Virus record (IMG/VR): IMGVR_UViG_3300046092_000062
Location: 124,001 to 188,000 of that record
DNA length: 64,000 nucleotides
Reading direction: 5' to 3' (one strand)
A program made the translations under genes and the position numbers. The notes beneath the pieces are model-generated. The model ran no database searches, had not been told where the DNA came from, and saw only the letters and a program-made list of their open reading frames with translations. Below, one piece after another: positions 1 to 56,876 of the stretch (its first letter is position 1; every line of letters begins with the position of its first letter).

Positions 1-259
1 GCAAACTAACAAGCCCAAGAAACGTGAGTGGATTGATGATTACTTTATTCAGCTAGCAGCATACGCCGCAGCACACAATCACACTCACGGCACAGAAATC
101 AACACTGGCGTTATTTTAATGGCTCAACAGCCAACTACATTGCCCAATGGCGAACTAGACAAGCCGGTTTATACCGAATATGTAATCGAAGGCGATGAGT
201 TTGCACATTGGGACAAAGAGTGGATGAAACGTGTAGAGATGTATTACCTGTCTAGCTAA
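1..259 (+). CDS. C-terminal part of a Cas4-like/PD-(D/E)XK phage exonuclease (5' truncated)
   Basis: Frame from nt 2 reads QTNKPKKREWIDDYFIQLAAYAAAHN...YYLSS* (stop 257-259); QLxxY motif of RecB/Cas4-like nucleases. Confidence 0.7.
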   Translation, partial: QTNKPKKREWIDDYFIQLAAYAAAHNHTHGTEINTGVILMAQQPTTLPNGELDKPVYTEYVIEGDEFAHWDKEWMKRVEMYYLSS

Positions 260-286
260 ATACACAATAGTTAGAGGATTAGCACA

Positions 287-1858
287 ATGGCTGTCGTACA
301 GATTTCACGCATTCAGGCACGTAGAGGCCTACAACAAGATTTACCAGCACTAGCAAGCGCAGAGTTTGCATGGAGTGTTGATACACGTAAGTTATACATC
401 GGTAACGGCACGTTAGCCGAAGGCGCCCCTACTGAAGGGGCAACGGAGATTTTAACTCAGTATACCGACTTTGCAGCAGTATTAAAGAATTACACGTTTA
501 AAGGCAATGCTGGCGGATATACTGCACAGACTACTACAAGCCCGCTAAATCCTATCGTACGAACAATTCAAGACAAACTTGACGATATTGTTAGTATCAA
601 AGACTTTGGCGCAGTAGGCGATGGCGTAGCAGACGACACCGCAGCAATTAATCGTGCAATCCAACAAATTTACTTGACTACACGATTGACAAATTATCCT
701 CAAGTGCGTAGAACAATCTTCTTCCCTGCAGGTACCTACAACGTAACTGGAGAAACTATTTTAATTCCGCCATATGCTCGTTTAATCGGGGACGGAATCG
801 AAAGTACAATCATTAAACAAACAGACGGTACACAAACTTCCTTATTCCAGTTTACTGATAGCATGTACCAGACTGGCGCATCGCTAGGACAAAACAGTGC
901 AACCCTGCCTGGTTACATCACAATCGAAAACATGACATTAGCAACAACTAGTGATCGTGATGTTGTTGCCATTGACAGCGCAGAACATGTGACATTCTTT
1001 GGCGTTGAGTTCTTGGGTAGCCTAAGCAGTCCGACTACTGCTGGTAGTCAAGCATACGCAGGCGTAAAAATCAATTCCTTTGCAGCGACTACTAAGAATA
1101 TCAATTTTTGGTCGTGCAAATTTAAGAACACACGTTACGCAGCATTAAGCGATGACGCTAGCAGCGACGTGAGAATGAACGGGTGTTTATTTGTTGGCTT
1201 GTACAAAGGTCTAAAGCTAGGCCAGAACAGTGCAAGCGTTGCAACCACTCCAAGCAACTACAAAATTCTAAACAGCATTTTTGCCAGTGTTGCAAACAAT
1301 GCAATTGACTGCTATGCAAACGTCACTGGCGTACTAAGCAGCGGCAATCACTTCCTTGACGTCGGTAACAACTTTGCAGGTTCCGGATCTCCTGTGGCAT
1401 CAATTATTTCGTTTGTGGCAAACGGTAACACCAGTGCCAACGATATGTTTGATCGCCCCGATGCTGACAACGTAACAGTTCCTCGATTGAGTTTTAACAA
1501 TGCTAAAAACATTGCAATTCAGGCCAACGTTGGTCTAACAGTTGGTACATATACTATCGGCACTAGCGGATATGCAGTACTAGCAGACAATACACCAGCC
1601 TTTACACAATCAAACATTAACTTAGTCAACGGGTGTACACTAACATACTCAATGACTAGAGGTACAGGTAAGCGTTTTGGTACGTTATTCTTTTCAAACG
1701 ATGGCACCACTGGAGCAAACTTCATTGAGACTGCAACACAAACTGGTTCAAACATTGGAGTTACTATCAGTGCAAGTAACGCTAACGTAATCACATATAC
1801 AACAACTTCTACTGGCTCACCTGCCATCGTTAAATACAACATCAACTACTTCAGTTAA
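287..1858 (+). CDS. virion fibre/spike protein with pectate-lyase-3-like beta-helix
   Basis: VSIKDFGAVGDGVADDTAAI motif; N-terminal IQARRG...EFAWSVDTRKLYIG fibre-type segment; TAAATA late promoter upstream. Confidence 0.75.
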   Translation: MAVVQISRIQARRGLQQDLPALASAEFAWSVDTRKLYIGNGTLAEGAPTEGATEILTQYTDFAAVLKNYTFKGNAGGYTAQTTTSPLNPIVRTIQDKLDDIVSIKDFGAVGDGVADDTAAINRAIQQIYLTTRLTNYPQVRRTIFFPAGTYNVTGETILIPPYARLIGDGIESTIIKQTDGTQTSLFQFTDSMYQTGASLGQNSATLPGYITIENMTLATTSDRDVVAIDSAEHVTFFGVEFLGSLSSPTTAGSQAYAGVKINSFAATTKNINFWSCKFKNTRYAALSDDASSDVRMNGCLFVGLYKGLKLGQNSASVATTPSNYKILNSIFASVANNAIDCYANVTGVLSSGNHFLDVGNNFAGSGSPVASIISFVANGNTSANDMFDRPDADNVTVPRLSFNNAKNIAIQANVGLTVGTYTIGTSGYAVLADNTPAFTQSNINLVNGCTLTYSMTRGTGKRFGTLFFSNDGTTGANFIETATQTGSNIGVTISASNANVITYTTTSTGSPAIVKYNINYFS

Positions 1859-1861
1859 TTT

Positions 1862-2299
1862 ATGTTCAAACTACAAGCTAGCGAGAGATTAACTCGCTGG
1901 CGTGAATTTCGAAAATCTCTGGATCACCTACCACTAGACAAAGCATTAGCCGAGGTTAATGACTTCTGGTCAGCATGTCCTTTCTCTCCTTACTACCTAG
2001 ATCCAGCCAAGCCTGACGAATGGCCAGATCCGTGGACCATGATCACCGAAAACTACTACTGCGATATTGCAAAAGCATTGGGTATGTTGTATACTATTAA
2101 GTACACCGCGCACAACCCCGACGTTGAGCTACGCATGTATGTCGATCCAGAAACAAAGTACGGTTATAATTTAGTCTGGATTGAGCAGGGGAAATATGTT
2201 ATTAATTTGGTCACTGATGAGATCGTAAATAAAGAACAGGTTGAAAATACATTAAAGTTGAAAGCTACGTTTAGCGATCAACTGCATTTGAATAGATAA
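1862..2299 (+). CDS. hypothetical phage protein
   Basis: 145-aa ORF tightly packed between neighbours. Confidence 0.7.
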   Translation: MFKLQASERLTRWREFRKSLDHLPLDKALAEVNDFWSACPFSPYYLDPAKPDEWPDPWTMITENYYCDIAKALGMLYTIKYTAHNPDVELRMYVDPETKYGYNLVWIEQGKYVINLVTDEIVNKEQVENTLKLKATFSDQLHLNR

Positions 2300-2311
2300 T
2301 AAGAGGAATCA

Positions 2312-20163: not shown

Positions 20164-20232
20164 TCACCAAAGTCTTTGACTTCATCAACATCATAACGTA
20201 TAGTGTAGGACTAAACCCTATAAATATACGTT

Positions 20233-21858
20233 ATGATATTCGGATACTTCACACTCTTAGTTGCACTAGTTATTAGTGCCGTTGCAGAATACTACTCAAT
20301 CGTAGGTCTTACTGCCATCTTCTCCGCAGCCTTTTGGCCCATTGTTATCATGGGCGCAGTACTTGGCGTGGGCAAAATCACTGCCGCAGTTTGGCTCAAA
20401 CTCAATTGGGAACGTGCTAGTTGGACCTACAAGTTATACCTTGTGCCAGCTGTGGCGTTCCTAATGGTACTAACTAGTATGGGCATCTTTGGATTCCTAT
20501 CAAAAGCACACAGTGACCAAAGTCTAGTAAGCGGGGACAGCCAAGCAAAAGTTGCTATTTACGACGAGAAGATTAAAACAGCCAAGGACAATATTGATGC
20601 TAACCGCAAAGTACTTAAACAAATGGATGAGGCTGTGGACCAGAGTATGGCACGCTCAACTGATGAAAAGGGTGCCGACAAAGCCGTTGCAATACGCAGG
20701 GGCCAGCTCAAAGAGCGCCAACGCTTACAGTCCGAAATCGCAGCCGAACAGAAAACAATTAATCAACTTTCTGAAGAACGGGCACCGCTAGCAGCAGAGT
20801 TCCGTAAAGTAGAAAGCGAAGTTGGCCCAATCAAATACATTGCAGCACTAATCTACGGAGACAATCCAGACGCCAACATCTTAGAAAAGGCCGTGCGCCT
20901 AGTTATTATGATGATCGTTGCGGTGTTTGATCCATTAGCCCTTGTGTTAATTTTAGCGGCGCAGCAAAGCCTTAAGTGGGCACGTGGGGAGGAACACACA
21001 CCTGTCGAGGTGAACAAACATACGCAGACTGTTGTTGAGGATAACGCAGTCGGGGAACCACACGAACCCACACCCACTGTAGAAGAACAGTCCGTAGTAG
21101 ACGATTGCGCGGTAGTCGATGCTGAGCACACAGCTCAGAGTGTCTCTACTGAGTCTACCCCTACAGTGGAAGTGGATTTGTTTGCGTATCTAAAGAAACC
21201 CTTTGTGCATTTTTCAAACTTGCCACCAATGGTGTATAAACGAGAAGTTGTTGTAGATGAAGAAGACAACATCCGTCCATTAACCGAGGAGGAAGTAATG
21301 GCGCCGGCTTACGAAGAAGATGATGGCCCGTTAAGTGAAGAACAGGTGGCACAACTTATCAAGTCCGTGGAGGCTTTTAAGCCGGTAACTGAGCCCGCTG
21401 AACCAAAGATCCTGGCAATGGGCATTGACGAAGTTGAACGTCCAGGTGACTACATTACTCCCCCTGAGTACACTGGTCCAATGAAAGAAGTAGTCGAAGA
21501 ACACATTGACCCAAATACTCGTATCAAGACTCTTAGTCATTCATGGGTGCCAGACCTAGATGCACACGCAGACAATATTGATCGCGCTAAAGCAGCCAAC
21601 GCAGACTTTGGAACTAAGTTTCCAGAATCTGCAACCAAAGGTGACATGTATCTGCGTGTAGACTTCTTGCCAGCTAGACTGTTTAAGTTCAATGGCGTTA
21701 AATGGATTGAAGTTGACAAAGCAGCAACTGATAGCTACACTTACAATGAAGAATACATCAAGTACCTAATTGACAAAATCAACAGTGGCGAATACGATGT
21801 TGAAACACTAAGCGAGAGCGAACAAGAGCAGATTCGCGAATATCTAAAGAACAAATGA
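20233..21858 (+). CDS. multi-TM membrane protein with periplasmic coiled coil and acidic tail
   Basis: 3 N-terminal TMs, coiled coil, VFDPLA TM; TATAAATA at 20219. Confidence 0.7.
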   Translation: MIFGYFTLLVALVISAVAEYYSIVGLTAIFSAAFWPIVIMGAVLGVGKITAAVWLKLNWERASWTYKLYLVPAVAFLMVLTSMGIFGFLSKAHSDQSLVSGDSQAKVAIYDEKIKTAKDNIDANRKVLKQMDEAVDQSMARSTDEKGADKAVAIRRGQLKERQRLQSEIAAEQKTINQLSEERAPLAAEFRKVESEVGPIKYIAALIYGDNPDANILEKAVRLVIMMIVAVFDPLALVLILAAQQSLKWARGEEHTPVEVNKHTQTVVEDNAVGEPHEPTPTVEEQSVVDDCAVVDAEHTAQSVSTESTPTVEVDLFAYLKKPFVHFSNLPPMVYKREVVVDEEDNIRPLTEEEVMAPAYEEDDGPLSEEQVAQLIKSVEAFKPVTEPAEPKILAMGIDEVERPGDYITPPEYTGPMKEVVEEHIDPNTRIKTLSHSWVPDLDAHADNIDRAKAANADFGTKFPESATKGDMYLRVDFLPARLFKFNGVKWIEVDKAATDSYTYNEEYIKYLIDKINSGEYDVETLSESEQEQIREYLKNK

Positions 21859-28634: not shown

Positions 28635-28702
28635 TCTAGAGCAAACCTCCTGTAAATAAGTTAGGGTAGCCCTCTAACAATAATAATAACAGGAGATGCG
28701 CT

Positions 28703-29648: not shown

Positions 29649-29963
29649 ATGTCTAAATACCTTATTGCTCTCTGTCTTGCTCTAGCATGTGCTGCATCGT
29701 ATGCACAAAAACCAGTGGAAACAAACAAGAAGATTGTGTGCTTTCCTGTTAAAGTCCTAATGAAGGATCTTAAAGACAAGTACGGCGAAGAACCAATGGT
29801 AATGGGCACAACTTCAAATATGAGCGACGTTGCAATGGCGTTGTACCTTAATAAAGAAACCGGCTCATTCACTATTATTGAGTTTGACAGCGAAGCAGCT
29901 TGCGTTATTAGCATCGGTAAAGATGTGCGTTACCGTTTTCCCAAGACCGGAACGATGCTATAA
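29649..29963 (+). CDS. secreted hypothetical protein
   Basis: Signal peptide; C...YGEEP...N.ETGSFTIIE...AC..G. Confidence 0.7.
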   Translation: MSKYLIALCLALACAASYAQKPVETNKKIVCFPVKVLMKDLKDKYGEEPMVMGTTSNMSDVAMALYLNKETGSFTIIEFDSEAACVISIGKDVRYRFPKTGTML

Positions 29964-29970
29964 ATACTAG

Positions 29971-30510
29971 ATGCGTATTACAGAAGTTAGCCTGCCTAAA
30001 AATCTATGGGAATTAGTTGTATCCAATGCCGATAAGCAAGAGCTTGGGGACAATTTAATTGATCTAGTTAACAACGCCTACGGTTCTACTGCACACGGCA
30101 GTTTCGTTACTAGCATTAGAGATGTTATTCCAAGCGACTGGAACGTCATTGACTGGGATGAAGATCCTGAAGTTGATGCGTGTGTATTTTATCGTGGACC
30201 TAGGGCAAACGAGCAATGGGTTGGGTATAAGATCCAAGGCATCGGGCACGATGGGCAAAAACAAAGCAAAGACCGTGTGATAAACAAAGTGACTCAGTTG
30301 CTTAACAAGCCAGGTTTCTGGATTGAAAGTAGTGATGCTATGCGAGCAACCCTAAAGCGTTTACCAGTACCAATGGTAGACAGCGAACACTTGCTGAAGT
30401 TCTTATTCAATGATCCGCATCTAAAGATGGTTGACCATGGAACCTACCAACGCAAGCTACAAAGCGGCATGGCAATTGAAACAGTATTCGGAAATCCACG
30501 AATAACCTAA
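29971..30510 (+). CDS. late protein with MRITE leader (possibly GNAT-like)
   Basis: TATAAATA at 29959-66 just before ATG. Confidence 0.65.
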   Translation: MRITEVSLPKNLWELVVSNADKQELGDNLIDLVNNAYGSTAHGSFVTSIRDVIPSDWNVIDWDEDPEVDACVFYRGPRANEQWVGYKIQGIGHDGQKQSKDRVINKVTQLLNKPGFWIESSDAMRATLKRLPVPMVDSEHLLKFLFNDPHLKMVDHGTYQRKLQSGMAIETVFGNPRIT

Positions 30511-35171: not shown

Positions 35172-36325
35172 CGCATGTTCATCGCTACAGTGTACTCTTT
35201 GAAGTTGTGCAAGCGATCTTGCAGTCCTCTGAGCGCAGGGTTAATATATTTAGTGACCGTGGCAGTGTCATTGAAGTTGTGTACGTTAGGTCTAACGCGA
35301 GTTTGCCAATACCACACTGCAATCTTGGCAGCAATTTCTGGGTTAGCAGCAAGCTCTGGCTTTTGCTCTAACGGCAACCCTAACGCTTTTCCTGCCATGC
35401 GATAGTTGTCGCGTCCGGTGATTTGAATAAAGCCACGACCGTGATACCTAACTCCGTCCCCTGCATGTGTATTGCCCAAGGTCTTAGCCATACCCGGTGC
35501 AGCCTTGGGGTCGTAACGCTTGTGGAAGTACTTGGCGCCGCCGATCTCCTTCATTCGTGTAAAATCTGCACTTTCGTGACGTGTTTGTGCCATGAATTGT
35601 GCTAGTTCTGCCCCTTTAATGCCTGCTCTGATAGCAGTACGTTGTAGAGTATGCTCGGGCCCCATATTCATACTCACCCCAAATGTGTCTGGTTGTGCTA
35701 CTTTTGGAGTTGCTACTTTAGGTTGTGCAGCTTTGGCTACATGGTGTGCTGTTGCCTTAGGTTGTGCATGTGGCGCAGATTTAGCATCAGCTGCGCCACC
35801 ACCTAACGCCATGCCCGCAGCAAGTGCGCCAGTAGCAGCCCAGTCTTTCCATCCCTCTTCAAGATCTTGTGCAGAATAAATGGCATCTAGTGCATCGTCT
35901 AGCTGTCGCAACGGAATTCCTGCGTTGTTGTATCCGCGTTCCAATCGAGCAATATACGCATCGTTTGGTTCTGTGCCTTGCATGTACTCACGAGTCTCCG
36001 GAGTCATTGTATAGATCTCTGCTTCGTGGCGCTTTCCATTGGCAAATACTGGAACTGTTTTGCGATCGTATAAACTTGGGTAGCCCTCTGTTTGGTCCAG
36101 TTGAGCAAGTAGCTGTCTATCGATTGCCCACAAGCTACCAATTACTCTAGCTCCGGGATATGGAAATACGTTGGCATAAGTGAACATTTCAAACACAAAG
36201 TTCTTTAGCTCTGCACGACTAACAAATTCTGCACCGGGCATCAGTTCTGGGTCTGTTAACATGCCGTAGGCAAAATAGTATATAGGGGCCGCGCCAGCTT
36301 CGTCTAGTACATCTGTGATTTTCAT
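35168..36325 (-). CDS. gamma-glutamylcyclotransferase (AIG2-like) fused to a GH19 lysozyme/chitinase
   Basis: YFAYG, LDQTEGYP..Y (GGCT); FMAQTRHES, YHGRGFIQITGRDNY (GH19). Confidence 0.85.
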   Translation of the reverse strand: MKITDVLDEAGAAPIYYFAYGMLTDPELMPGAEFVSRAELKNFVFEMFTYANVFPYPGARVIGSLWAIDRQLLAQLDQTEGYPSLYDRKTVPVFANGKRHEAEIYTMTPETREYMQGTEPNDAYIARLERGYNNAGIPLRQLDDALDAIYSAQDLEEGWKDWAATGALAAGMALGGGAADAKSAPHAQPKATAHHVAKAAQPKVATPKVAQPDTFGVSMNMGPEHTLQRTAIRAGIKGAELAQFMAQTRHESADFTRMKEIGGAKYFHKRYDPKAAPGMAKTLGNTHAGDGVRYHGRGFIQITGRDNYRMAGKALGLPLEQKPELAANPEIAAKIAVWYWQTRVRPNVHNFNDTATVTKYINPALRGLQDRLHNFKEYTVAMNMR

Positions 36326-36332
36326 ACTGTAT

Positions 36333-37454
36333 TTAGTAAGCCAATATACGGTTTAAGTTCTGCAAGTCTGCAGGGTTGTAGGGAATGTTGCACTCAGTTA
36401 ATGCGCTACCTAGTTTGTCTGTTAACTCGTTTACTACCAGTGGACGCATGGTAGTATAAAAGTGGTTAAAGTTGTATTCTAATATTTCAGCCATTGCTAA
36501 TTTCATTTGCACCAGTTCTTCGTGCGTTTTATTACATAGATCTTCAAGTATAGCTAGCACCGCATCAAAGCGATCGGCACTGTTAGTAATAGTGTCGTAT
36601 CCCTCGTCCCAGAATTCCCCAAAGGTACGAAAGCCATACTTGCGCAAGTACGCCAAATTGCCAGCGCCAGCTAACAACAAAAAGGGCATCTTAGCCACAA
36701 TCGGCTTAAAGATCTTTTCAGTTAGATGTTGTTTATTTTCGTAGAAGATGGTTTCAGTAACTAGATTTACAAATGCCTTTTGCATATCCGCAACATTGAC
36801 CGCTGCACTAAGCTCTCCGCGTGGGTCGCTGGTGTCTATTATCATCTGCTTTTCAAGCAGGTGCATATGAGATCGAATGTTTGTTTTGTGAGGTTCTGGT
36901 AGCCATTGGTACGAGTTAGTAGAAGCCTCAATACTTTTAACATCAGCTGTATTGTAACTCACATATCCTTTCCCTACTAGATCTCTTTTCTGCAATTCGA
37001 TTACCAAGTTGGCGCGGTACAAACGTTTGTCTAATGTTAGATTGTTATAAGTAATATATGTGCGTTCAAAATCGGTATTGACATTTATGTTGTCGTACCA
37101 ATGCAATCTATACCATTCGTGACACAACAGTGCGTGATAAAAATACTGGACATCTTTCAAATTGTAATCATTACACAGTTTGTCGCTTTCTGTGCTATAC
37201 TCACTGGTTACTAGTACCCGACAAGCTGAAAAAGATTGAGAATACGATCTATAGAGTTCAATGTAAAATTTAGTAACGTCTATAGGTTCTTGGTCATAAA
37301 AAATAACAGTAGGTTTAAGTACAATCGGATAAGACGTCGATTTTGAAACAAAGTATATACGATTTTGATTAAACACAGGACACAATAACGCAATGCCCGA
37401 TTTATCAAAAAAGTGATCTCTCATTACATTATAGAAAAAATCAAAAGGAATCAT
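36333..37454 (-). CDS. putative glycosyltransferase-like protein
   Basis: LVTET, TEKIFKPI, GFRTF..FWDE.YD; paralogue of 43074-44165. Confidence 0.55.
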   Translation of the reverse strand: MIPFDFFYNVMRDHFFDKSGIALLCPVFNQNRIYFVSKSTSYPIVLKPTVIFYDQEPIDVTKFYIELYRSYSQSFSACRVLVTSEYSTESDKLCNDYNLKDVQYFYHALLCHEWYRLHWYDNINVNTDFERTYITYNNLTLDKRLYRANLVIELQKRDLVGKGYVSYNTADVKSIEASTNSYQWLPEPHKTNIRSHMHLLEKQMIIDTSDPRGELSAAVNVADMQKAFVNLVTETIFYENKQHLTEKIFKPIVAKMPFLLLAGAGNLAYLRKYGFRTFGEFWDEGYDTITNSADRFDAVLAILEDLCNKTHEELVQMKLAMAEILEYNFNHFYTTMRPLVVNELTDKLGSALTECNIPYNPADLQNLNRILAY

Positions 37455-39183: not shown

Positions 39184-40097
39184 TATCAAGTTGGAATGAA
39201 TACGATCCGTTAAAGCGTATTATTGTTGGTGATGCAACACATGCGAATTGGCCAGTATATGATAAGGTCTTTCGCGCAGAAGAACAAAATACCTTGTGGA
39301 AAGAAACTCCACTCCCATCTGGTCCAGTACCACAGTGGATCATTGATGAAACTAATCGTGACCTGCAACGTCTTTGCACCATTCTTACTGTACACGGCGT
39401 AGAAGTGGAGCGCCCAACTACAATGAATTTCCAAGTGCATGATGGCCTGTACAATTACTGTCCCCGAGATCGTTTCATTGTGCATGGCGGTATTATTATC
39501 AACCCTGCAATGATGTATCCTTGCAGAGATATGGAATATCAATGCTACATGGATTTTCTTGACGAAGCAGAACACATTATTCACATGCCACGTGATAAGG
39601 GCATGGTGCTGGATGCAGCAAACATTCTACGTATTGCTAAAGACAAGTGGTTGTTCTTAGAATCGGCCAGCGGCAATCGCGCTGCATACGATTGGCTATG
39701 CAAACAAGTGCCAGACGTTGAAATTGAACTGTGTAACTTCTACGCTGGTGTGCATATTGATTCAACCATTGTTGCATTAAATGAAAATACCTTTATTGTT
39801 AACGGCAGCAGAGTAACCAATGACACGCTGCCTAAGATGTTGCGAGACAAAGAACTGATCTTCGTTAACGATGTTGTGGCGCAAGAGTTCCACGAGTATC
39901 CGTATGCTAGCAAGTGGATTGCGCTTAACATGCTGAGTATCAATCCCACTACTGTCATCGTTGACGCTGCACAAGACCTACTAATTAAAACCTTAGAGGC
40001 ATTAAAGTTCACAGTTATTCCGTTGACCCTACGCCATAGCCGCACTCTCGGCGGAGGCTTCCACTGTGTAACGCTCGATTTAGTTCGTTCGATATAA
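39180..40097 (+). CDS. amidinotransferase (glycine/inosamine-phosphate AT family)
   Basis: SWNEYDPL, CPRD, DAAN, HIDS, GGFHCVTLD. Confidence 0.9.
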   Translation: MISSWNEYDPLKRIIVGDATHANWPVYDKVFRAEEQNTLWKETPLPSGPVPQWIIDETNRDLQRLCTILTVHGVEVERPTTMNFQVHDGLYNYCPRDRFIVHGGIIINPAMMYPCRDMEYQCYMDFLDEAEHIIHMPRDKGMVLDAANILRIAKDKWLFLESASGNRAAYDWLCKQVPDVEIELCNFYAGVHIDSTIVALNENTFIVNGSRVTNDTLPKMLRDKELIFVNDVVAQEFHEYPYASKWIALNMLSINPTTVIVDAAQDLLIKTLEALKFTVIPLTLRHSRTLGGGFHCVTLDLVRSI

Positions 40098-40119
40098 ATA
40101 CTTGATAATAAGAACAACT

Positions 40120-40881
40120 ATGACCGATTTTTCTAGATATTCAGATGCACTGCTTTCAGCACTTAAACACTCAAGCAAAGAGCAAGAGATTGTAACAAAG
40201 AAGCAAGAAATTTTAGATGGCATCTATGGATTTCACAACTTTGTGCCAAATACAACTTTATTCGTTGGGTTCAATCCCGCATTGCTTTCTGCCAAGAACG
40301 GCGACGTTTCTGTCACCTGTATTAGCCAAGCCGCAAGGGATTACTTAGACAGCAAGAACGTCAAGTACACATACGTATCAGAATCTGAAACTGTTGGTAA
40401 GAAGTTTGACGTTGTGGTTGCAATGGAAGAATTCTTTACGTTTGCTGATAACGAGTTAGATCAGCAAAATGTTGTTAAACAGATTTGTAACCTAGCCAGT
40501 GAATTTGTGGTAAGTACTTTACGTGATTATAAGAATCAAGACTTTAAAGATCGTGAGTTCAGTATCCCAGCTGTGATTCGAAATGGCAAGACCAACTGCG
40601 TTTACAATGAGTTCCATGACTGGGACTTTGCAAACCGTAGCGCATGGACCACTACTGTATACGAAATTTCAAATCCAGCACACGAACTAACCACTTACGG
40701 ACCGTTTAATAGACGTACTATGTACTTCAAACAGTTGGCTAAGTTTAGTATGGATGCAGGTGCAGGTGATTTCATTGTGCATAAAAACCTCATGTATAAG
40801 TCATTGATTAAGAAAAATTATGAACACGTTATCAGCATAAGATTTGAAGATCAATGGAACTATCAAAATTCGACTCGTTAG
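40120..40881 (+). CDS. degenerate methyltransferase-fold protein
   Basis: TLFVG...FDVVVA pattern; late promoter at 40093. Confidence 0.45.
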   Translation: MTDFSRYSDALLSALKHSSKEQEIVTKKQEILDGIYGFHNFVPNTTLFVGFNPALLSAKNGDVSVTCISQAARDYLDSKNVKYTYVSESETVGKKFDVVVAMEEFFTFADNELDQQNVVKQICNLASEFVVSTLRDYKNQDFKDREFSIPAVIRNGKTNCVYNEFHDWDFANRSAWTTTVYEISNPAHELTTYGPFNRRTMYFKQLAKFSMDAGAGDFIVHKNLMYKSLIKKNYEHVISIRFEDQWNYQNSTR

Positions 40882-45522: not shown

Positions 45523-45564
45523 ATTTCGGTTGACCAGAAATGATTTTGGTTATATAATACACAC

Positions 45565-45888
45565 ATGAAACAAATTATTGCACTCTGTATCGTTCTTGCA
45601 ATCGCTGGCACTGCCCAAGCTAAAGGTGGTGGTGGTGGAGGTGGACATGGTGGTCACGCCAGTTCTGGTGGACATGCAAGCTCAAGTCACGCAGCAGCAC
45701 CAGCAAAAGCACCTGCTCCTGTTGCACCTGCTCCAGCAAAAAGTACTACTTCGCCAAGCAAAAGTACTACAGAAAGTCCTAGCACTGTGACTAGTCCTTC
45801 GTACTTCTATATGCCATGGAACATCTGGCATCAGAAAAGCAATGGCAGCAAAGATTGCGATAAAAACAAAGACAAAAACTGCAAATAA
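45565..45888 (+). CDS. secreted Gly/Ser/Pro-rich protein
   Basis: Signal peptide; promoter 45530-45558. Confidence 0.7.
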   Translation: MKQIIALCIVLAIAGTAQAKGGGGGGGHGGHASSGGHASSSHAAAPAKAPAPVAPAPAKSTTSPSKSTTESPSTVTSPSYFYMPWNIWHQKSNGSKDCDKNKDKNCK

Positions 45889-48195: not shown

Positions 48196-48210
48196 ACGCT
48201 GTAGATTACG

Positions 48211-48252
48211 AGCCCCTGGGCGGTAGTTAAATACCGTAACCAGGGGCTTTTC
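48211..48252 (+). terminator. terminator hairpin with TAAATA late promoter in its loop
   Basis: AGCCCCTGG...CCAGGGGCT TTT. Confidence 0.7.
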
Positions 48253-48748: not shown

Positions 48749-48796
48749 GGTAATCCTGTTATAATAGTTGCTCAACAACTAACTAACAGGAATCTA

Positions 48797-49731: not shown

Positions 49732-49802
49732 CTCAGTAGAAACCATGAGATAATGTTGCATTTCAGTATAAATACTAGTACACTCACTAGAAGGAAACTG
49801 AA

Positions 49803-49955
49803 ATGCAATTATTACAATGGATCAAAAGTCTATTTGCTGCACCATCTTACCAAGATGAACTAGACAGCTATGTCACAAGCAAGCACCCAACTACCACTAC
49901 AGAAGTCGAGCACTGGATTCGCCAGTACGACTCACGCAAGGGGTGGTCACTATGA
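49803..49955 (+). CDS. DUF3563-like small protein (50 aa)
   Basis: MQLLQWIKSLF..SYQDELDSYV.S.....EVEHWIRQYD; TATAAATA at 49767. Confidence 0.6.
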   Translation: MQLLQWIKSLFAAPSYQDELDSYVTSKHPTTTTEVEHWIRQYDSRKGWSL

Positions 49956-50042: not shown

Positions 50043-50606
50043 ATGATCACTTACCGAATTCTATCTGCGCCTGAGTTACCAAAATACGCTATGTTTCTAA
50101 AACAGCGTAATTCCGATTCCCTTAACCTTTATTTCGGACACGCTATGCGCCACGAAATGATTGATCATTTAATGGACGGAATGATTGCAGATGCACACTT
50201 GCACAATATTGTGGTAGCAGAAGATATTGATCAAGAAATTGTGGGCACTGTGCATATTGCACGTATGAGCGACCACGAAGTAGAGTTTGGTGTAATGGTA
50301 GCAGAAGCATATCGCAGCAAGGGCATTGCTAGTGGTATGATGGATTATGCTATGACATGGGCACAAAATAGAGGTTTTAGAGACCTTTACATGCACTGTT
50401 TGAGCTATAATGCACCCATCAAGCACCTTGTTACCAAGCACGGACTCGCTATCAGCAGAGACGGAATCGAAAGCGATGCCCGTGTTACTATGCCTCCTAC
50501 TAACATCTTTAGTATTGGGCACGAAATTGCCCTGCGCCAACAGAACGCAGTTAACACAACTCTTAACCACACAATTCAAAGTTTTCGTCGAGCGCTAGCG
50601 TTATAA
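50043..50606 (+). CDS. GNAT acetyltransferase
   Basis: EFGVMVAEAYRSKGIAS (motif A), CLSYN. Confidence 0.88.
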   Translation: MITYRILSAPELPKYAMFLKQRNSDSLNLYFGHAMRHEMIDHLMDGMIADAHLHNIVVAEDIDQEIVGTVHIARMSDHEVEFGVMVAEAYRSKGIASGMMDYAMTWAQNRGFRDLYMHCLSYNAPIKHLVTKHGLAISRDGIESDARVTMPPTNIFSIGHEIALRQQNAVNTTLNHTIQSFRRALAL

Positions 50607-50616
50607 ATACGTTACC

Positions 50617-51534
50617 GTGAAAACATTTGAATTAAACAACTCTTACTCAGATCGCCCTGTTGTCTATGTAGATATGGACGGTGTCCTTGCGGACATGTTC
50701 GGCGAAGCTGCCCGTCGTGAAGGTGCAACGCATTGGCGTAGAGCACGTAAAGAAAAAGACTGCATTGATCAAGTCGCACAAGAACCTGGATTCTTCGCTG
50801 AATTGCCAGCATTACCACAAGCAGGTAAACTGCTACATGGTGTGCTGAAATTAGCCGGTGAGTACAGTATCTTATCTGCTCCGCTAATGAGCGATGTGGA
50901 ACAAAGCAGTAGAGAAAAAGCTGACTGGATTGATCGCAAGCTATCTAGAATCCCTCCCGAAAGCATTATCTTTGATCACCAAAAGGAAAAGTTTGCTAGA
51001 CAAGCAGATGGTACTCCTAACATCTTAATTGATGATTGGGATAGCAATATCAAGCTATGGGAAGCCAATGGCGGCATTGGTATCTTGTACAAAGATGGCG
51101 AGTGTGAGCGGGCTTTAAAGAAACTGCACTATGCACTAGAGGGCTTGATCCCTGCTAGTGAAGTAGAAGACGAAGATGTTGACCTAAGCGTAGAAAACAA
51201 ACTCTACACCAATCAGCAGGTGCTCAAGTATGTTAAAGGCATACATAATGAATATCATTTAGAAAAGCCAATTCTGCGACACAAGGTGTGGGTGCTTAAA
51301 GAAGTCCCACTAAGTGAGTTGCAGACTCCAGAGTTCTACGATCAAGACGATCCTTACCGCAGAGTAATCGACTTGGACTGGGACCACATCAACAATGTTA
51401 CAACCCGTGATATTTTAAAGAAGCCCGTAGTTGCAGACAGCAACGGGTGGTTACTAGATGGCAACCATAGGGTTACAGCCGCTAGAGCCAAGGGCTTGCA
51501 AAGCATCCGAGCATTAGTTCCGTACCAAGATTAA
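50617..51534 (+). CDS. HAD 5'(3')-nucleotidase fused to a ParB/Srx-like domain
   Basis: DMDGVLAD, LIDD (HAD); LDGNHRV.A (ParB-like); acidic linker. Confidence 0.85.
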   Translation: MKTFELNNSYSDRPVVYVDMDGVLADMFGEAARREGATHWRRARKEKDCIDQVAQEPGFFAELPALPQAGKLLHGVLKLAGEYSILSAPLMSDVEQSSREKADWIDRKLSRIPPESIIFDHQKEKFARQADGTPNILIDDWDSNIKLWEANGGIGILYKDGECERALKKLHYALEGLIPASEVEDEDVDLSVENKLYTNQQVLKYVKGIHNEYHLEKPILRHKVWVLKEVPLSELQTPEFYDQDDPYRRVIDLDWDHINNVTTRDILKKPVVADSNGWLLDGNHRVTAARAKGLQSIRALVPYQD

Positions 51535-51567
51535 TAGTGCGTATAAATACCTAATACAGGTATTTTT

Positions 51568-54027
51568 ATGCGCTATAAACAAATCAAAACATTAACAGAA
51601 CAAACATTATTTGAAGTCAATATGAGCCCAGGCAGCTTGCGTAAACTCGCAAGTCAGATCAATGCCAAGGCTGGTATGGAATTTGAAATGATTGTTCCTA
51701 ACGTCAAAATTGATGGTGAAGAAGATTTTGAATCGGAACCCGACTACGAACATGACCCACGCACACGCAGCATCAGCGACATTCGTGATTTCTTCCACGA
51801 TGGTGATCATAACGGACGCCGTGCAGTTGATGAGCTAGTAGAAGAATTAGAACAAGAATTCTACGAGTGGCGCCAAACGAAAATTGACGAAGAATGGGCC
51901 AGTGACGGTTACGAGTTCTTTTCCCAATGGGTTAGAGAAAACGTCAGCGACGATGAATGGCTAACCGGCGATGATGAAGACGACGAAAATGAAGCGTTTT
52001 CCAAATATATAGATCGCGAATGGGAATCACAAGACCGTGCTTACACAGAAGCATACAATGAATTTGTTTCTGACCACGAAGACGATTGGGATAGCGGCGA
52101 TTGGTTGAATGCAGTTGATTATGACTACATGACCGACATTGCCAACAACTTTGATATCAGCTGGCCTTATTGGACAGAATATCAAGGGGACGATGATAAC
52201 ATGGATGTAGAGAAGGTTGCTGATGATTTTAGCAACGCAATCGGTCGTCCAGTTAATCACAGTACCAGCTACCATGGCGCACGCCGAGAAGAAGGCACAT
52301 ACGTAGTCGAACCCGATGGCAGCTTAGAAGGTGACGATAGCGATGATGGTGGTTTAGAATTTGTTAGCCCACCATTGCCTATTGCAGAATTGCTAAGTGA
52401 CTTGCAGAAAGTTAAACGTTGGGCCAAGCGTAGAGGTTGCTATACAGGTAGCGATTACGGCACAGGCCTGCACATTAACGTATCAGTTGATGGTTGGAAA
52501 GGGCTTGAGAGTTTAGACTACGTTAAGCTAGCAATCTTACTTGGCGACGAGTACGTGCTAAAGCAATTTGAACGACAAAGCAATACCTATTGCAAGAGTG
52601 CGTTGGGACTAGTTAAAAACGCAATCAAGCAGAATCCTCTAAGTGCCAAAGAGCTGCTAGAGAAGATGAAGAACCACATGAACACTGCGGCCAGCAAGTT
52701 GATCCACAGTGGTATCACCAACAAGTTTACTAGTATCAACACCAAAGACGGTTACGTAGAGTTCCGCAGTCCGGGCGGTGATTGGTTAGATGAATTTGAA
52801 GACAAAATTGAACCTACGCTACTACGCTTTGTGGTTGCATTGGATGCAGCAGTACACGAAGACAAGTACAAACAAGAATACCAAAAGAAGTTGTATAAAC
52901 TACTAGAGCCAAGCATGGACGAATATGGTGCAATGGTTAAAGACTTCAGTGACTACGTAAGTGGTGTCGGTGGTGCTCCTGAACAAGTTGTTAAAGACTT
53001 TAGACGTGCAGCATTGTCTAAACTGCAACAAAGTAACGTAGGCAAGAAGTCACAGCGCAATGAAGGCAACTGGGGCTTGTGGGCAAAAGTTCCTAACAGA
53101 TTCGCCGCATTGAGTACAGACAAGGACAGTGCGTTACGTAGATTTAAATCTAAAGAGGACGGTGAGGCATGGATGGCTAGTCATGGGCTAAAGCCAGAAC
53201 GTTTTGACGTTTTAGAAATCCCAGCTGATTATGTACCCTCTGAGCGAAATGTCAATACGTTCCAAGAGCCAACTGCTAACCGCGGCGACTTAGTTCCACG
53301 TGGTCCGGGTCCATGGGAAATTTACAGAATAAGCGATGGTAGCAGTGTAAGAGCATTAGATCAAACTAACCGCAACGGAGCTGAAACCGAAGCGAGAACT
53401 GCATTAGGGTTGCGTGCCGAAGCTCCTGAGTTATACGGAGTACGTACTCGCCAATCAGCACAACAGCCAAATTGGGAAATTCGAAACGCAAGTACCAATG
53501 GTTTAGTGGATCAGTTTTATGCACCCGACCAGAATACGGCCATTGGCATACAGTTTGATTACTTACAAGATCAAGGACTAGATTCAAATGATTACGTGCT
53601 TCAAGCTATCGAGCAACCTAGTGCAGCACAAGTAGCACAACAGTCGCACAATGCTCATCAAGCAGCAAACATGCAAGAGTGGACTATCTTAAATGGCCAG
53701 GGCGCAGTGATGGGCAGAGTGCAAGCTGCCACACAAGGTGAGGCTAATCAACGTGCAGCCGGATTCCTTGGCAGACACCATCCCAACATGATGGGGCAAG
53801 AAGTTGAGGTAGTACCGACCGCGGCGCACAATGCTAGACAACAAAGTCAAGCACAGCCTCAGCGATTTGAAATCTACAAACGAAGCACAGGTCAACCTGC
53901 TGTTGAATTAACTAGCACTAATCAACAAGATGCATGGCTCGAAGCACAAGAGATGTTTAGAACTCGTTATGCCGCTTACGACCCAGCTGAATATAGCGTT
54001 AGAGCTGTAACTCCATCTATCCCGTAA
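51568..54027 (+). CDS. putative amidoligase (COOH-NH2 ligase type 2) with C-terminal repeats
   Basis: GMEFE, EPDGSL, LEFVSPP, TGLHINVS, VEFRSPGG. Confidence 0.8.
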   Translation: MRYKQIKTLTEQTLFEVNMSPGSLRKLASQINAKAGMEFEMIVPNVKIDGEEDFESEPDYEHDPRTRSISDIRDFFHDGDHNGRRAVDELVEELEQEFYEWRQTKIDEEWASDGYEFFSQWVRENVSDDEWLTGDDEDDENEAFSKYIDREWESQDRAYTEAYNEFVSDHEDDWDSGDWLNAVDYDYMTDIANNFDISWPYWTEYQGDDDNMDVEKVADDFSNAIGRPVNHSTSYHGARREEGTYVVEPDGSLEGDDSDDGGLEFVSPPLPIAELLSDLQKVKRWAKRRGCYTGSDYGTGLHINVSVDGWKGLESLDYVKLAILLGDEYVLKQFERQSNTYCKSALGLVKNAIKQNPLSAKELLEKMKNHMNTAASKLIHSGITNKFTSINTKDGYVEFRSPGGDWLDEFEDKIEPTLLRFVVALDAAVHEDKYKQEYQKKLYKLLEPSMDEYGAMVKDFSDYVSGVGGAPEQVVKDFRRAALSKLQQSNVGKKSQRNEGNWGLWAKVPNRFAALSTDKDSALRRFKSKEDGEAWMASHGLKPERFDVLEIPADYVPSERNVNTFQEPTANRGDLVPRGPGPWEIYRISDGSSVRALDQTNRNGAETEARTALGLRAEAPELYGVRTRQSAQQPNWEIRNASTNGLVDQFYAPDQNTAIGIQFDYLQDQGLDSNDYVLQAIEQPSAAQVAQQSHNAHQAANMQEWTILNGQGAVMGRVQAATQGEANQRAAGFLGRHHPNMMGQEVEVVPTAAHNARQQSQAQPQRFEIYKRSTGQPAVELTSTNQQDAWLEAQEMFRTRYAAYDPAEYSVRAVTPSIP

Positions 54028-54033: not shown

Positions 54034-54057
54034 AAACCCGCTTCGGCGGGTTTCTCT
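54034..54057 (+). terminator. intrinsic terminator
   Basis: AAACCCGC-TTCG-GCGGGTTT. Confidence 0.85.
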
Positions 54058-54091
54058 TGACCAAAAACTATTTTGGGCGTATAATATCTAT

Positions 54092-54322
54092 ATGAAAAAA
54101 TTAAACGTCAACGATATCATGCAGTGGACTGGTACACTCTGCTTCATGGCCATGTACACTTTGATGTCAATGAACATCTACCCATGGAACATTGTAGCAG
54201 GACTTAGCGGTAGTACTTGCTACTTAATATGGTGTCTGCGTGTTGTAAATAAGCCACAGATGGTTGTTAACGCAGTGGGCATCATTGTGTGCCTAGTTGG
54301 TCTAGTTAAGGCTTTTGGTTGA
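54092..54322 (+). CDS. small 3-TM membrane protein
   Basis: Hydrophobic; YPWN, VVN; promoter 54057-54085. Confidence 0.7.
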   Translation: MKKLNVNDIMQWTGTLCFMAMYTLMSMNIYPWNIVAGLSGSTCYLIWCLRVVNKPQMVVNAVGIIVCLVGLVKAFG

Positions 54323-55954: not shown

Positions 55955-56077
55955 AATGGGCAAAAAGAATTTAAATTGTGGTTGACTCATTATTCGAAAT
56001 CAACTATAATTTAAATACTGTAGCAATGAGGCTACATTGAGAGTGTGTTTTTCAATTAACGTAAATGGAGTTTACAA

Positions 56078-56416
56078 ATGACTAAATTGTTCAAAGTCGG
56101 TGGTGTTTCTAAGTGCAAATCTGGTTACAAGGTGCGTTTCGCAACTGACATGACCCGCGTCAAGATTCTGGCAAAGACTGATACGGATATCCAGCTAATG
56201 GATTTGCCCAATGAGATGACCAAGCCTGACTTGGTTACTTATCTTAAGACCACAGACTTGTATGCCAATGCTGCATACAAAGAGGCGATTGACAATGCTG
56301 ATGCAAAGTACAACGCCGTGGCAACGGTTAAGGTCACAAAGACCAAAGCAGAAAAGCCAAGCATGGAAAAGCTCAAGGCTAAGGCCGCAGCTAAAACAGA
56401 AGCAGACGCAGCTTAA
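56078..56416 (+). CDS. basic hypothetical protein
   Basis: Promoter 55982-56010; KVRFA.D..RVK.L. Confidence 0.7.
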   Translation: MTKLFKVGGVSKCKSGYKVRFATDMTRVKILAKTDTDIQLMDLPNEMTKPDLVTYLKTTDLYANAAYKEAIDNADAKYNAVATVKVTKTKAEKPSMEKLKAKAAAKTEADAA

Positions 56417-56435
56417 TCAGCAAGTGTGCAAAAAC

Positions 56436-56460
56436 AGGGCGAACTTGGCTTCGCCCTTTC
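56436..56460 (+). terminator. intrinsic terminator
   Basis: AGGGCGAA-loop-TTCGCCCT TTC. Confidence 0.7.
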
Positions 56461-56489
56461 TCTTGGCTAAATATAGCATATAGGAGAAC

Positions 56490-56876
56490 TTGATGATCAA
56501 GTACATTAAAGAAACCACCACGCCAGCGGATGTAATTAGACCTGTGTTCCGCCCAGAACTCAAGCATGTGTTTGATGCAAGGGATGCAATTATTACAAAA
56601 TATAATGTTGCAGGTACCGAAACAACCCACGAAAAAACAGATTTACCAGACGGGTCAAAAATCACTGTAATGGTCAAGTTCTTTGAGTCTGTAGAGAAGT
56701 TTGATCAATGCTTTGCAGAGTTGCGAGATGCAAATCAAACTATCACTGCAACAGTCAACAATGAAAATGTCACAGTTGACTCAATCAACCACAATTTTGG
56801 AATCACAATTCGATATCAATTGCGTGATGCAGAGACTGACGAAATTGTACGAGATTGGACAGTTGCAGGTCGTTAA
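56490..56876 (+). CDS. late hypothetical protein
   Basis: CTAAATA and AGGAG upstream. Confidence 0.65.
   Translation: MMIKYIKETTTPADVIRPVFRPELKHVFDARDAIITKYNVAGTETTHEKTDLPDGSKITVMVKFFESVEKFDQCFAELRDANQTITATVNNENVTVDSINHNFGITIRYQLRDAETDEIVRDWTVAGR

What the first reader, a model, noticed from the sequence alone, without database searches (positions are those of the whole stretch)
251..56490. Late promoters embedded in hairpins that hide the RBS or start codon
Seen: TAAATA late-promoter boxes sit between inverted repeats whose 3' arm covers or abuts the SD or ATG. Examples: TCTAGCTA/TAGTTAGA (251-275); CATAACGTATA/TATACGTTATG (20192-20235, includes the ATG); CTCCTGT/ACAGGAG (28647-28695); TAGTT-GTTC/GAAC-AACTA (40081-40120); TTGCATTTCAGT/ACTGAAATGCAA (49756-49808, 12 bp perfect, includes the ATG); AAATACCT/AGGTATTT (51545-51565); TTCTCTT/AGGAGAA (56458-56488). 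Known: T4 uses this design for a few genes (e, soc, I-TevI), so early read-through mRNA is not translated while late mRNA lacks the 5' arm. Inference: here it is a general timing device for late genes scattered among early genes.
Basis: partly seen in the sequence, partly recalled or inferred. Interest (0 to 1): 0.6.

Follow-up and report, generated by a model that had tools for sequence, protein, structure and literature searches.

The report
Hairpin-masked late genes in jumbo phage

Summary
The window is part of a 320-kb T4-superfamily jumbo phage: it has a gp23-type capsid, and its 91%-identical relative encodes a gp55-type late sigma factor. TAAATA is a real promoter-like motif, the most enriched hexamer upstream of genes, and it precedes sheath, tube and fibre genes.

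- Three are far better than shuffles (20190-20237, 49756-49808, 51534-51576).
- One is borderline (28647-28695).
- Three are at chance level (251-275, 40081-40120, 56458-56488).
- The best one was missed (48210-48249).

Genome-wide, 8-9 of 55 leadered TAAATA sites form a separate class. In it, opening the ribosome binding site costs 8.5-15.5 kcal/mol more on a read-through RNA than on an RNA started at the box; 0.6% of swap chimeras reach that.

These sites lie mostly behind early-type promoters (7/21 against 1/34). The 48210 hairpin is conserved with compensatory changes in 11 lineages.

Against a general device:
- 46 of 55 sites have no such mask.
- Two distant relatives show no excess.
- Four sigma70-type promoters carry the same hairpins.
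- Several hairpins look like terminators.

No start sites or timing data exist.

A side finding: many genes look leaderless (TAAATA-N4-ATG, TATAAT-N6-ATG).

The parts
48210..48249 (+). It has a GC-rich lower stem and an upper stem. The TAAATA box (48228-48233) sits at the apex and the SD in the 3' lower arm. A T-tract follows at 48248-53, then the ATG at 48254 of a SprT-like gene (48254-48748).
   Evidence: dG -37.1. RBS opening costs 20.5 kcal on the long RNA and 5.6 on the short one. Conserved in 11 lineages at 59-75% aa identity: 10 of 12 pairs compensatory, 84.7% paired against 69.7% in shuffles, 0/500 shuffles reach it. Pfam SprT-like, E 8e-5, below the cut-off.
49756..49808 (+). 12-bp perfect hairpin. 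TATAAATA is at 49767-49774. The 3' arm covers the spacer and the ATG at 49803 of a conserved 50-aa ORF (49803-49955).
   Evidence: z -5.1; ddG 12.7. The ortholog in L171 (59% aa identity) has a masking hairpin of unrelated arm sequence, -21.9. The close relative G1 has two disruptive changes in the 5' arm, -24.7 to -19.5.
51534..51576 (+). 10+8 bp hairpin. TATAAATA (51542-51549) lies in the 5' arm; the SD, a T5 run and the ATG at 51568 lie in the 3' arm. The gene is an 819-aa amidoligase-domain protein (51568-54027).
   Evidence: z -6.4; ddG 15.5. Identical in G1. The TAAATA box is kept in distant orthologs but the mask is not, ddG <= 4.3. Pfam Amidoligase_2.
20190..20237 (+). 13-bp hairpin with a nested 6-bp stem. 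TATAAATA (20219-20226) lies 6 nt before the ATG at 20233, with no SD, so the start is near-leaderless. The 5' arm lies inside a sigma70-like promoter, TTGACT-N17-TATAGT (20176-20204). The gene is a 541-aa core gene (20233-21858).
   Evidence: z -4.6. TAAATA-N4-7-ATG is kept in at least 52 distinct IMG/VR lineages. The hairpin is found only in the near sub-lineage (swap z 0.78 over all lineages). Covariation is partial: 66.7% paired, score 0.165 against 0.123, 1/500. RNAalifold gives no consensus.
28647..28695 (+). 7-bp outer stem (5' arm against the SD) with a nested hairpin. The TAAATA box is at 28653-28658. The start codon is TTG at 28703 of a conserved 260-aa gene.
   Evidence: z -1.85 but ddG 11.6. 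Kept in L274. Unrelated-sequence masks with a T-tract occur in L310 and L311. Most of 66 lineages have no TAAATA there at all.
48754..48791 (+). Same architecture around an early-type box. TATAAT is at 48760-48765. The 3' arm holds the SD of ClpP (ATG 48797).
   Evidence: ddG 9.6-10.0. L171 has an 8-bp equivalent of different sequence. There is no excess over 65 ClpP loci. Pfam CLP_protease E 4e-61.
251..275 (+). Weak 8-bp repeat (one G-U pair) around the TAAATA at 257-262, upstream of a tailspike-like gene (287-1858).
   Evidence: z -0.44; ddG 4.4. The gene has a pectate-lyase-like domain. Chance level.
40081..40120 (+). Weak bulged repeat around the TATAAATA at 40093-40100; ATG at 40120.
   Evidence: z -0.45; ddG 1.6. 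Chance level.
56436..56488 (+). Terminator-like hairpin at 56436-56457. Its T-tract (56458-56464) can pair with the SD at 56482-56488. The TAAATA box is at 56468-56473 and the ATG at 56493.
Evidence: The pairing is a generic match between a T-tract and an SD.
29961..29973 (+). TAAATA-N4-ATG with no SD: a probable leaderless late start of the gene 29971-30510.
   Evidence: Spacing peak of 18 against about 3. Kept in G1.
36323..36335 (-). TAAATA-N4-ATG on the minus strand: a probable leaderless late start of the gene 35168-36325.
45530..45567 (+). Full sigma70 promoter (TTGACC-N17-TATAAT), then N6 and the ATG at 45565: a probable leaderless early start. The same layout occurs at 54057-54094.
   Evidence: 11/12 promoter matches. 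TATAAT-N6-ATG peak of 15 against about 3. 14 of 15 such sites have a -35 match of at least 5/6.
50602..50619 (+). TATAAATA followed 7 nt later by the GTG start of an NT5C-like gene (50617-51534). In G1 a 740-nt insertion sits exactly at this box, and the gene there starts TAAATA-N5-ATG.

Best explanation
A discrete minority of promoters in this T4-superfamily jumbo phage are nested inside stable RNA hairpins. Most of these promoters are gp55-type late boxes (core TAAATA) that lie downstream of early-type promoters.

The 5' arm lies upstream of, or overlaps, the box. The 3' arm is the Shine-Dalgarno sequence and/or the start codon. In about a third of cases a T-tract follows, which also serves as the SD-to-ATG spacer.

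A transcript arriving from upstream contains both arms. It is therefore terminated at the T-tract, or, if it reads on, has its ribosome binding site locked in the stem. A transcript started about 5 nt after the box, inside the hairpin, lacks the 5' arm and is translatable. The gene is thus expressed only from its own promoter. This is the T4 e/soc/49/I-TevI mechanism.

Shown here:
- the motif, the hairpins and their excess over controls;
- their position relative to early-type promoters;
- covariation at one locus.

Inferred, not shown: the start site, late timing, read-through, and the effect on translation.
For: The motif is real and late-type.
- It is enriched upstream of genes and of virion genes.
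- The genome has a gp23-type capsid protein.
- The 91%-identical relative G1 and a distant relative G2 encode a gp55-type late sigma.

The start about 5 nt after the box is supported by two observations.
- There is a sharp TAAATA-N4-ATG peak.
- A occupies that position in 58% of leadered sites.

The masked sites form a separate class.
- The ddG of RBS opening is bimodal: 9 sites at 8.5-15.5 kcal/mol, the rest at 5.6 or below.
- Only 0.6% of swap chimeras reach 8.5 (binomial p 2e-9).
- 7 of the 8 strong masks classified lie behind an early-type promoter, 7/21 against 1/34, p 0.003.

There is evidence of selection on structure.
- 48210-48249 has 10 of 12 pairs with compensatory changes, including U-G pairs that only work on the sense RNA; 0/500 shuffles match it.
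- Masks of unrelated sequence occur at orthologs of 49803 (L171), of 28703 (L310) and of ClpP (L171).

Sites without an SD (TAAATA within 8 nt of the start) show no hairpin excess (z -0.09). That is expected if the hairpins exist to hide an SD.

The T4 precedent, with mapped 5' ends and a 100-fold effect, is reviewed in PMC3014915.
Against: - No start-site, timing or translation data exist. The metatranscriptome runs that hold this DNA are kept only as contigs.
- In G1 the only changes seen inside strong stems are disruptive (49756 arm, and the hairpin at genome 76160).
- Masks are not conserved at the amidoligase, ClpP, 541-aa or 260-aa genes beyond near relatives.
- Genomes G2 and G3 show no excess.
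- Four of 64 sigma70-type promoters carry equally strong masks (Fisher p 0.07-0.12 against TAAATA sites). The device is therefore not clearly late-specific.
- With the box only 18-24 nt from the ATG, any hairpin that spans the box must cover the SD. Masking could be a by-product of a terminator.
Confidence: 0.55

Rival explanations
1. The strong hairpins are primarily intrinsic terminators or 3'-end stabilisers of the upstream gene. Genome compaction has pushed the next gene's promoter into the loop and its SD into the 3' stem. Masking of the ribosome binding site is then incidental.
For: - A T-rich tract follows the 3' arm at 48248-53, at genome 30349 and 239809, at the early-type 243471, and after the inner stem at 51560-67.
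- The T-rich tract is kept in nearly all 11 lineages of the 48210 hairpin.
- Convergent L310 also has a T6 run.
- Ordinary terminators sit directly before other TAAATA boxes, at genome 37006, 118149 and window 56436.
- PeSL stem-loops in T4-type phages terminate transcription (PMC2839356).
Against: - 49756-49808, 20190-20237 and 28647-28695, and the hairpins at genome 76160, 292815 and 215976, have no T-tract. Their stems are AT-rich or their loops run to 20-35 nt.
- The association with upstream early-type promoters fits both readings.
- The two functions are not exclusive.
Confidence: 0.25
2. The inverted repeats are chance matches in AT-rich intergenic DNA, or generic pairing between pyrimidine tracts and purine-rich SDs.
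For:
- Swap controls already give 0.28 mean pairing, with 19% of chimeras above 0.5.
- 56458-56488 is a terminator T-tract pairing with an SD.
Against: - z -4.6 to -6.4 for three examples.
- 8-9 of 55 sites against 0.6% of chimeras for strong masks.
- Covariation at 48210-48249.
Confidence: 0.05
3. The hairpin-plus-promoter units act at the DNA level as recombination cassettes (like PeSLs) that shuffle genes, not as RNA regulators.
For: - G1 carries a 740-nt insertion exactly at the TATAAATA of 50602.
- Upstream regions of conserved genes (ClpP, the 260-aa gene) are replaced wholesale between lineages.
- PeSL precedent: PMC2839356 and PMC4122927.
Against: - The arm sequences are not shared between sites, so they offer no homology for recombination.
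- G-U pairs and compensatory changes point to selection on the sense-strand RNA fold.
- Only one indel at a box was examined.
Confidence: 0.1
4. The stems are processing sites (RNase III-like) that cut polycistronic RNA between genes.
For: Stems of 12-18 bp lie between genes. No direct evidence.
Against: - Most stems are shorter than classic RNase III substrates.
- This does not explain why the box is always inside and the SD always in the 3' arm.
- No RNA ends are available.
- Rfam finds no known family at these sites.
Confidence: 0.05

Closest known systems
T4 genes e, soc, 49 and I-TevI, and Aeh1 mobE: a ribosome binding site sequestered in early read-through mRNA, with the late promoter inside the hairpin (reviewed in PMC3014915)
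   Same: - A gp55-type late box lies between or within the arms.
- The 3' arm covers the SD or AUG.
- The late transcript is predicted to lack the 5' arm.
- The design is found at genes that lie behind early promoters.
   Different: - The box core is TAAATA, not TATAAATA.
- The predicted start is about 5 nt after the box.
- Leaders are only 12-16 nt long.
- Several hairpins are also terminator-like.
- There are about 9 cases in one genome rather than a handful, yet still a minority.
- None is tested experimentally.
PeSLs (promoter-early stem-loops) of T4-type phages (PMC2839356, PMC4122927)
   Same: - Composite intergenic cassettes: a stop codon, a stem-loop that can terminate, a promoter, an SD and an ATG.
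- Four sigma70-type promoters here (for example 48754-48791, ClpP) have this look.
- One indel junction between close relatives lies at a promoter box.
   Different: - PeSL stem-loops sit between -35 and -10 or over -10 and do not reach the SD. Here the stem spans the promoter and its 3' arm is the SD.
- Most cases here are late-type boxes.
- The arms are not a repeated sequence family.
Leaderless mRNAs (for example lambda cI from PRM; common in Actinobacteria and Deinococcus)
   Same: A -10-like box at a fixed distance from the ATG, with no SD: TATAAT-N6-ATG with a good -35, and TAAATA-N4-ATG.
   Different: This is a side finding, not the hairpins. My two searches of the open-access paper library for leaderless starts with late promoters found no such report. 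No start sites have been mapped.

Membership tests
T4-type RBS-masking hairpin with an internal late promoter | A late promoter box lies between or within the arms of the hairpin | tested here: met
   TAAATA lies in the loop or a stem of all strong hairpins.
T4-type RBS-masking hairpin with an internal late promoter | The 3' arm pairs the SD and/or the start codon in a stable helix | tested here: met
   Met for 8-9 of 55 sites, with ddG of opening 8.5-15.5 kcal/mol. Not met for 251-275, 40081-40120 and 56458-56488.
T4-type RBS-masking hairpin with an internal late promoter | The late transcript starts inside the hairpin and lacks the 5' arm | not testable with these tools
   Only inferred, from the N4-ATG spacing peak and from A at box+5. 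The runs that hold this DNA are contigs only.
T4-type RBS-masking hairpin with an internal late promoter | Early or middle transcripts read into the gene and are not translated | not testable with these tools
   Indirect only. 7 of the 8 strong masks classified have a sigma70-type promoter 1-2.7 kb upstream on the same strand.
T4-type RBS-masking hairpin with an internal late promoter | The structure is kept by selection (covariation) | tested here: inconclusive
   Strong at 48210-48249. Partial at 20190-20237. Arm turnover with the fold kept at 49756. Only disruptive changes in G1. Not conserved at other loci.
T4-type (gp55-dependent) late promoter | TATAAATA at -10, with no -35 element | tested here: inconclusive
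   Only the 6-nt core TAAATA is conserved; the two positions before it are not TA. There is no -35. TATAAATA itself is at chance frequency.
T4-type (gp55-dependent) late promoter | The phage encodes a gp55-type sigma factor | tested here: met
   Absent from the 92%-complete G000 record. Present in the 91%-identical complete relative G1: phrog_12791 E 5e-75 and phrog_234 E 1.5e-23. Also present in G2.
T4-type (gp55-dependent) late promoter | gp33 co-activator and gp45 clamp | not tested
   Not searched. Iyer et al. report gp33 in all group 2 jumbo phages (PMC7824862).
PeSL | A sigma70-type early promoter combined with a stem-loop terminator in a repeated cassette | tested here: not met
   Most cases are late-type boxes without a -35, and the arm sequences are unique. 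Four sigma70-type cases resemble PeSLs in form.
Intrinsic terminator | A GC-rich stem directly followed by a U-tract | tested here: inconclusive
   Fits 48210-48253 and the hairpins at genome 30349, 239809 and 243471. Does not fit 49756-49808, 20190-20237 or 28647-28695. The simple scan (loop 8 nt or less) flags only 56436-56457.

The most novel reading that the evidence does not exclude
In this clade of T4-superfamily jumbo phages, translation of many genes may depend on use of the gene's own promoter, by two interchangeable routes.

(a) Leaderless starts, with the box placed so that the ATG is at +1. These are TAAATA-N4-7-ATG for late genes and TATAAT-N6-ATG for early genes. There are about 33 in this genome, and one is conserved in at least 52 lineages.

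(b) Hairpins of terminator-like or masking form, with the promoter at the apex and the SD in the 3' arm.

The SprT-like gene shows both solutions in different lineages: the hairpin in 11, and TAAATA-N5-ATG without hairpin or SD in L264.

This would be a genome-wide insulation of genes against read-through. It would also be the first case, in my two paper-library searches, of leaderless translation from gp55-type late promoters.
Probability: 0.35. Interest if true: 0.65.

Novelty: new member of a known kind. Interest (0 to 1): 0.42.

Why it matters
The T4 trick of hiding a ribosome binding site until the late promoter fires has been documented for a handful of genes in T-even phages and Aeh1.

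Here it appears in a distant, uncultured freshwater jumbo-phage lineage. It shows covariation at one locus and convergent re-invention at others. That suggests a recurrent solution to the problem of late genes lying downstream of early promoters in densely packed genomes.

The same analysis limits the claim: the device is used at about one late promoter in six, not generally.

The data also point to widespread leaderless starts from both promoter classes. If confirmed, that would change how genes and start codons are called in these phages, and it would explain how genes without an SD are kept silent on read-through RNA.

Tried and rejected
- Megablast of 5 kb, and tblastn of a 937-aa protein, against annotated phages: no match.
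- gp55 in G000 by protein, by two PHROG profiles, by Pfam Sigma70_r2 and by my own HMM: nothing. The record lacks the part that matches the first ~40 kb of G1.
- Stop-start coupling as the cause of the N4-ATG peak: rejected. TAA is the upstream stop in only 4 of 18 cases, and there is no general N7 peak.
- Hairpin excess at TATAAT sites by mean pairing: none (z -0.43).
- Hairpin excess at SD-less TAAATA sites: none.
- Hairpin excess in distant genomes G2 and G3: none.
- Compensatory changes between G000 and G1: none at the 55 leadered sites, too little divergence. By eye, the SD-less hairpin 20190-20237 shows two compensatory and three disruptive changes.
- RNAalifold on 15 homologs of the 20190 hairpin: no consensus.
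- Conservation of masks at the amidoligase, ClpP, 541-aa and 260-aa gene families: not found beyond near relatives.
- Relatives of the 103-aa gene next to 49756: only G1.
- Sequencing runs: three metatranscriptomes hold parts of the stretch, but as contigs only, so they give no starts, ends or strand. DNA carry-over is not excluded.
- Rfam: no known RNA family at any hairpin.

The large protein searches were not needed.


Full report
WHAT THE WINDOW IS

The window is bases 124001-188000 of a 320,767-bp IMG/VR virus record (43.7% G+C, about 92% complete). Nothing similar is in the annotated phage collection at the DNA level.

One protein has weak kin in XacN1, Xoo-sp13, SCTP-2, RsoM2USA and Pelagibacter phage Mosig. 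The record has a gp23-type major capsid gene (Pfam Gp23, E 2e-98), a T4-like tail sheath and tube, RNR, ClpX/ClpP, NAMPT and others.

A complete 354-kb relative (G1) is 91% identical over 278 kb. It encodes a clear gp55-type late sigma factor: my HMM gives E 4e-32, phrog_12791 E 5e-75 and phrog_234 E 1.5e-23. So does a distant relative, G2. G000 lacks the gene only because its record misses the part that matches the first ~40 kb of G1.

This is therefore a T4-superfamily jumbo phage ('group 2' of PMC7824862). It comes from freshwater metagenomes.

IS TAAATA A PROMOTER?

- TAAATA is the most enriched hexamer in the 60 nt upstream of ORFs: 63 genes against 6.8 expected. TATAAT is also enriched.
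- It precedes the sheath, tube, a virion protein, fibre-like genes and a tailspike-like gene.
- Only the 6-nt core is conserved. The T4 octamer is at chance frequency.
- There is no -35 element.

Two classes of TAAATA site appear.
- Leadered sites have the box 18-24 nt from an ATG, with an SD.
- TAAATA-N4-ATG sites have no SD. This spacing occurs 18 times against about 3 at neighbouring spacings.

TATAAT shows a matching peak at N6 (15 times). Of those, 14 have a -35 match of at least 5/6. Both spacings put the A of the ATG at the canonical +1.

In leadered sites, the base at box+5 is A in 58%. I therefore place the late start about 5 nt after the box. This is an inference; no start site has been mapped.

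THE SEVEN EXAMPLES

All seven are present at the stated coordinates. Against dinucleotide shuffles:
- 20185-20250, 49745-49820 and 51530-51585 are strongly non-random (z -4.6, -5.1, -6.4).
- 28640-28715 is borderline (-1.85).
- 241-300, 40075-40135 and 56450-56500 are at chance level (-0.44, -0.45, -0.86).

Three further points:
- The '5' arm' at 56458-56464 is the T-tract of a terminator-like hairpin at 56436-56457.

GENOME-WIDE TEST

For 55 leadered TAAATA sites, I measured how far the ribosome binding site (-14 to +3) pairs with bases upstream of the predicted start. The control swaps upstream and downstream halves between sites.
- Native 0.359 against swap 0.276, z 3.7, p 2e-4. Under other settings z is 1.9-3.7.

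The free-energy cost of opening the site on a read-through RNA, minus the cost on an RNA started at the box, is bimodal.
- Nine sites score 8.5-15.5 kcal/mol: window 51544, 48228, 49769 and 28653, and genome 30349, 239809, 292815, 76160 and 215976.
- All other sites score 5.6 or less.
- Only 0.6% of swap chimeras reach 8.5 (p 2e-9).

So a real, discrete class exists, but it covers about one late promoter in six. Four of the nine are in this window.

DOES IT BEHAVE AS THE HYPOTHESIS PREDICTS?

Yes, in three respects.
- Seven of the eight strong masks classified lie at late boxes whose nearest upstream same-strand promoter is sigma70-type (7/21 against 1/34, p 0.003). Mean pairing shows the same trend.
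- Sites without an SD (TAAATA within 8 nt of the start) show no hairpin excess.
- Region 44-56 kb of the window is full of near-consensus sigma70 promoters. The late boxes there really are scattered among early-type ones.

No, in three respects.
- Sigma70-type TATAAT sites show no mean excess, yet 4 of 64 carry equally strong masks. One is the ClpP promoter at 48754-48791. The difference from TAAATA sites is not significant (p 0.07-0.12).
- Distant genomes G2 and G3 show no excess.
- About a third of the strong hairpins end in a T-tract and look like intrinsic terminators.

COMPARATIVE EVIDENCE

In G1 the core hairpins are mostly unchanged. The few changes inside strong stems are disruptive.

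The hairpin 48210-48249, upstream of a SprT-like gene, is found in 11 lineages at 59-75% protein identity.
- TAAATA is always at the apex and the SD in the 3' arm, followed by a T-rich tract and the ATG.
- 10 of 12 pairs show compensatory changes.
- 84.7% of cells are paired against 69.7% in shuffles.
- The covariation score is 0.548 against 0.294, and 0/500 shuffles reach it.
- Slid controls give 34-60% paired.
- U-G pairs point to the sense RNA.
- One lineage (L264) has instead TAAATA-N5-ATG, with neither hairpin nor SD.

Other loci:
- The 50-aa ORF behind 49756-49808 is real. Its ortholog in L171 has a masking hairpin built from unrelated arms.
- The 260-aa gene behind 28647-28695 has very diverse upstream regions. 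Masks occur in the near relatives and, convergently and with a T-tract, in L310 and L311.
- At the 541-aa gene (20233), TAAATA-N4-7-ATG is kept in at least 52 lineages. The hairpin is confined to a near sub-lineage, and RNAalifold finds no consensus. That sub-lineage also keeps a sigma70-like promoter just upstream.
- Masks are not conserved at the amidoligase gene or across 65 ClpP loci.

INTERPRETATION

The best reading is a composite insulator used at a minority of genes. The promoter sits inside a hairpin whose 3' arm is the SD or AUG, often with a terminator T-tract. Transcripts from upstream are then stopped and/or untranslatable, and only the gene's own transcript is translated. This is the mechanism documented for T4 e, soc, 49 and I-TevI and for Aeh1 mobE (PMC3014915).

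Some cases resemble PeSL terminator-promoter cassettes (PMC2839356). I cannot separate termination from masking without RNA ends.

The claim of a general device is not supported.

SIDE FINDING

Leaderless geometry at both promoter classes is the more unusual result. There are about 33 such genes in this genome, and one is deeply conserved. My two searches of the open-access paper library for leaderless starts with late promoters found no report of them from gp55-type promoters. Starts have not been mapped.

Stop-start coupling does not explain the spacing.

LIMITS

- Gene starts come from my own simple ORF and SD rules.
- The start-site offset is inferred.
- Several tests were chosen after seeing the data.
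- The metatranscriptome evidence is contigs only.

Noticed in passing
window 29961-29973 (+), 36323-36335 (-), 20221-20235 (+), 45530-45567 (+), 54057-54094 (+), 9745-9759 (+); genome-wide in G000: Sharp spacing peaks, both without an SD: TAAATA-N4-ATG occurs 18 times and TATAAT-N6-ATG 15 times, against about 3 at neighbouring spacings. Of the TATAAT cases, 14 of 15 have a good -35. These are probably leaderless mRNAs from both late-type and early-type promoters. The 541-aa gene keeps TAAATA-N4-7-ATG in at least 52 IMG/VR lineages.
   Followed up: partly
window 56859-57245 (+): Rfam finds a tmRNA gene of the betaproteobacterial, permuted type (116 bits against a gathering score of 84). A phage-borne tmRNA hints at a betaproteobacterial host.
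   Followed up: no
window 63515-63586 (+): A tRNA gene (Rfam 66.7 bits) with a TATAAT box at 63501 just upstream.
   Followed up: no
window 50602-50677; L029:4372-5110: The close relative G1 has a 740-nt insertion exactly at the TATAAATA box of 50602. No long ORF is open on the forward strand there, and it is bounded on the right by another TAAATA-N5-ATG. Promoter boxes may serve as indel junctions, as PeSLs do.
   Followed up: partly
window 22204-23406 and 48797-49420: The phage encodes both a ClpX-like ATPase (zinc finger plus AAA_2) and a ClpP protease. ClpP is 75-88% identical across 80 IMG/VR loci, while its upstream region is replaced wholesale between lineages.
   Followed up: partly
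window 20176-20204: A sigma70-like promoter (TTGACT-N17-TATAGT) is conserved in 15 lineages just upstream of the late box of the 541-aa gene, giving tandem early-type and late-type promoters. The hairpin's 5' arm lies between its -35 and -10.
   Followed up: partly
L264:240-303 (IMG/VR 3300032216_000494): The ortholog of the SprT-like gene has TAAATA-N5-ATG with neither hairpin nor SD, where 11 other lineages have the hairpin with an SD. This is a natural swap between the two architectures.
   Followed up: no
window 46800-52600: Three freshwater metatranscriptome runs hold parts of this stretch from strains about 4% divergent, and 21 DNA runs from 18 studies hold it in part. The phage lineage is widespread in freshwater and wastewater. 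The data are contigs only, so expression is not shown.
   Followed up: partly
G000:2560-2760 (outside the window): The gp23-type capsid gene has no exact TAAATA upstream, only a TAAAATA/AATAAA-like stretch before a strong SD. The late box therefore tolerates variants that my exact-match census misses.
   Followed up: no
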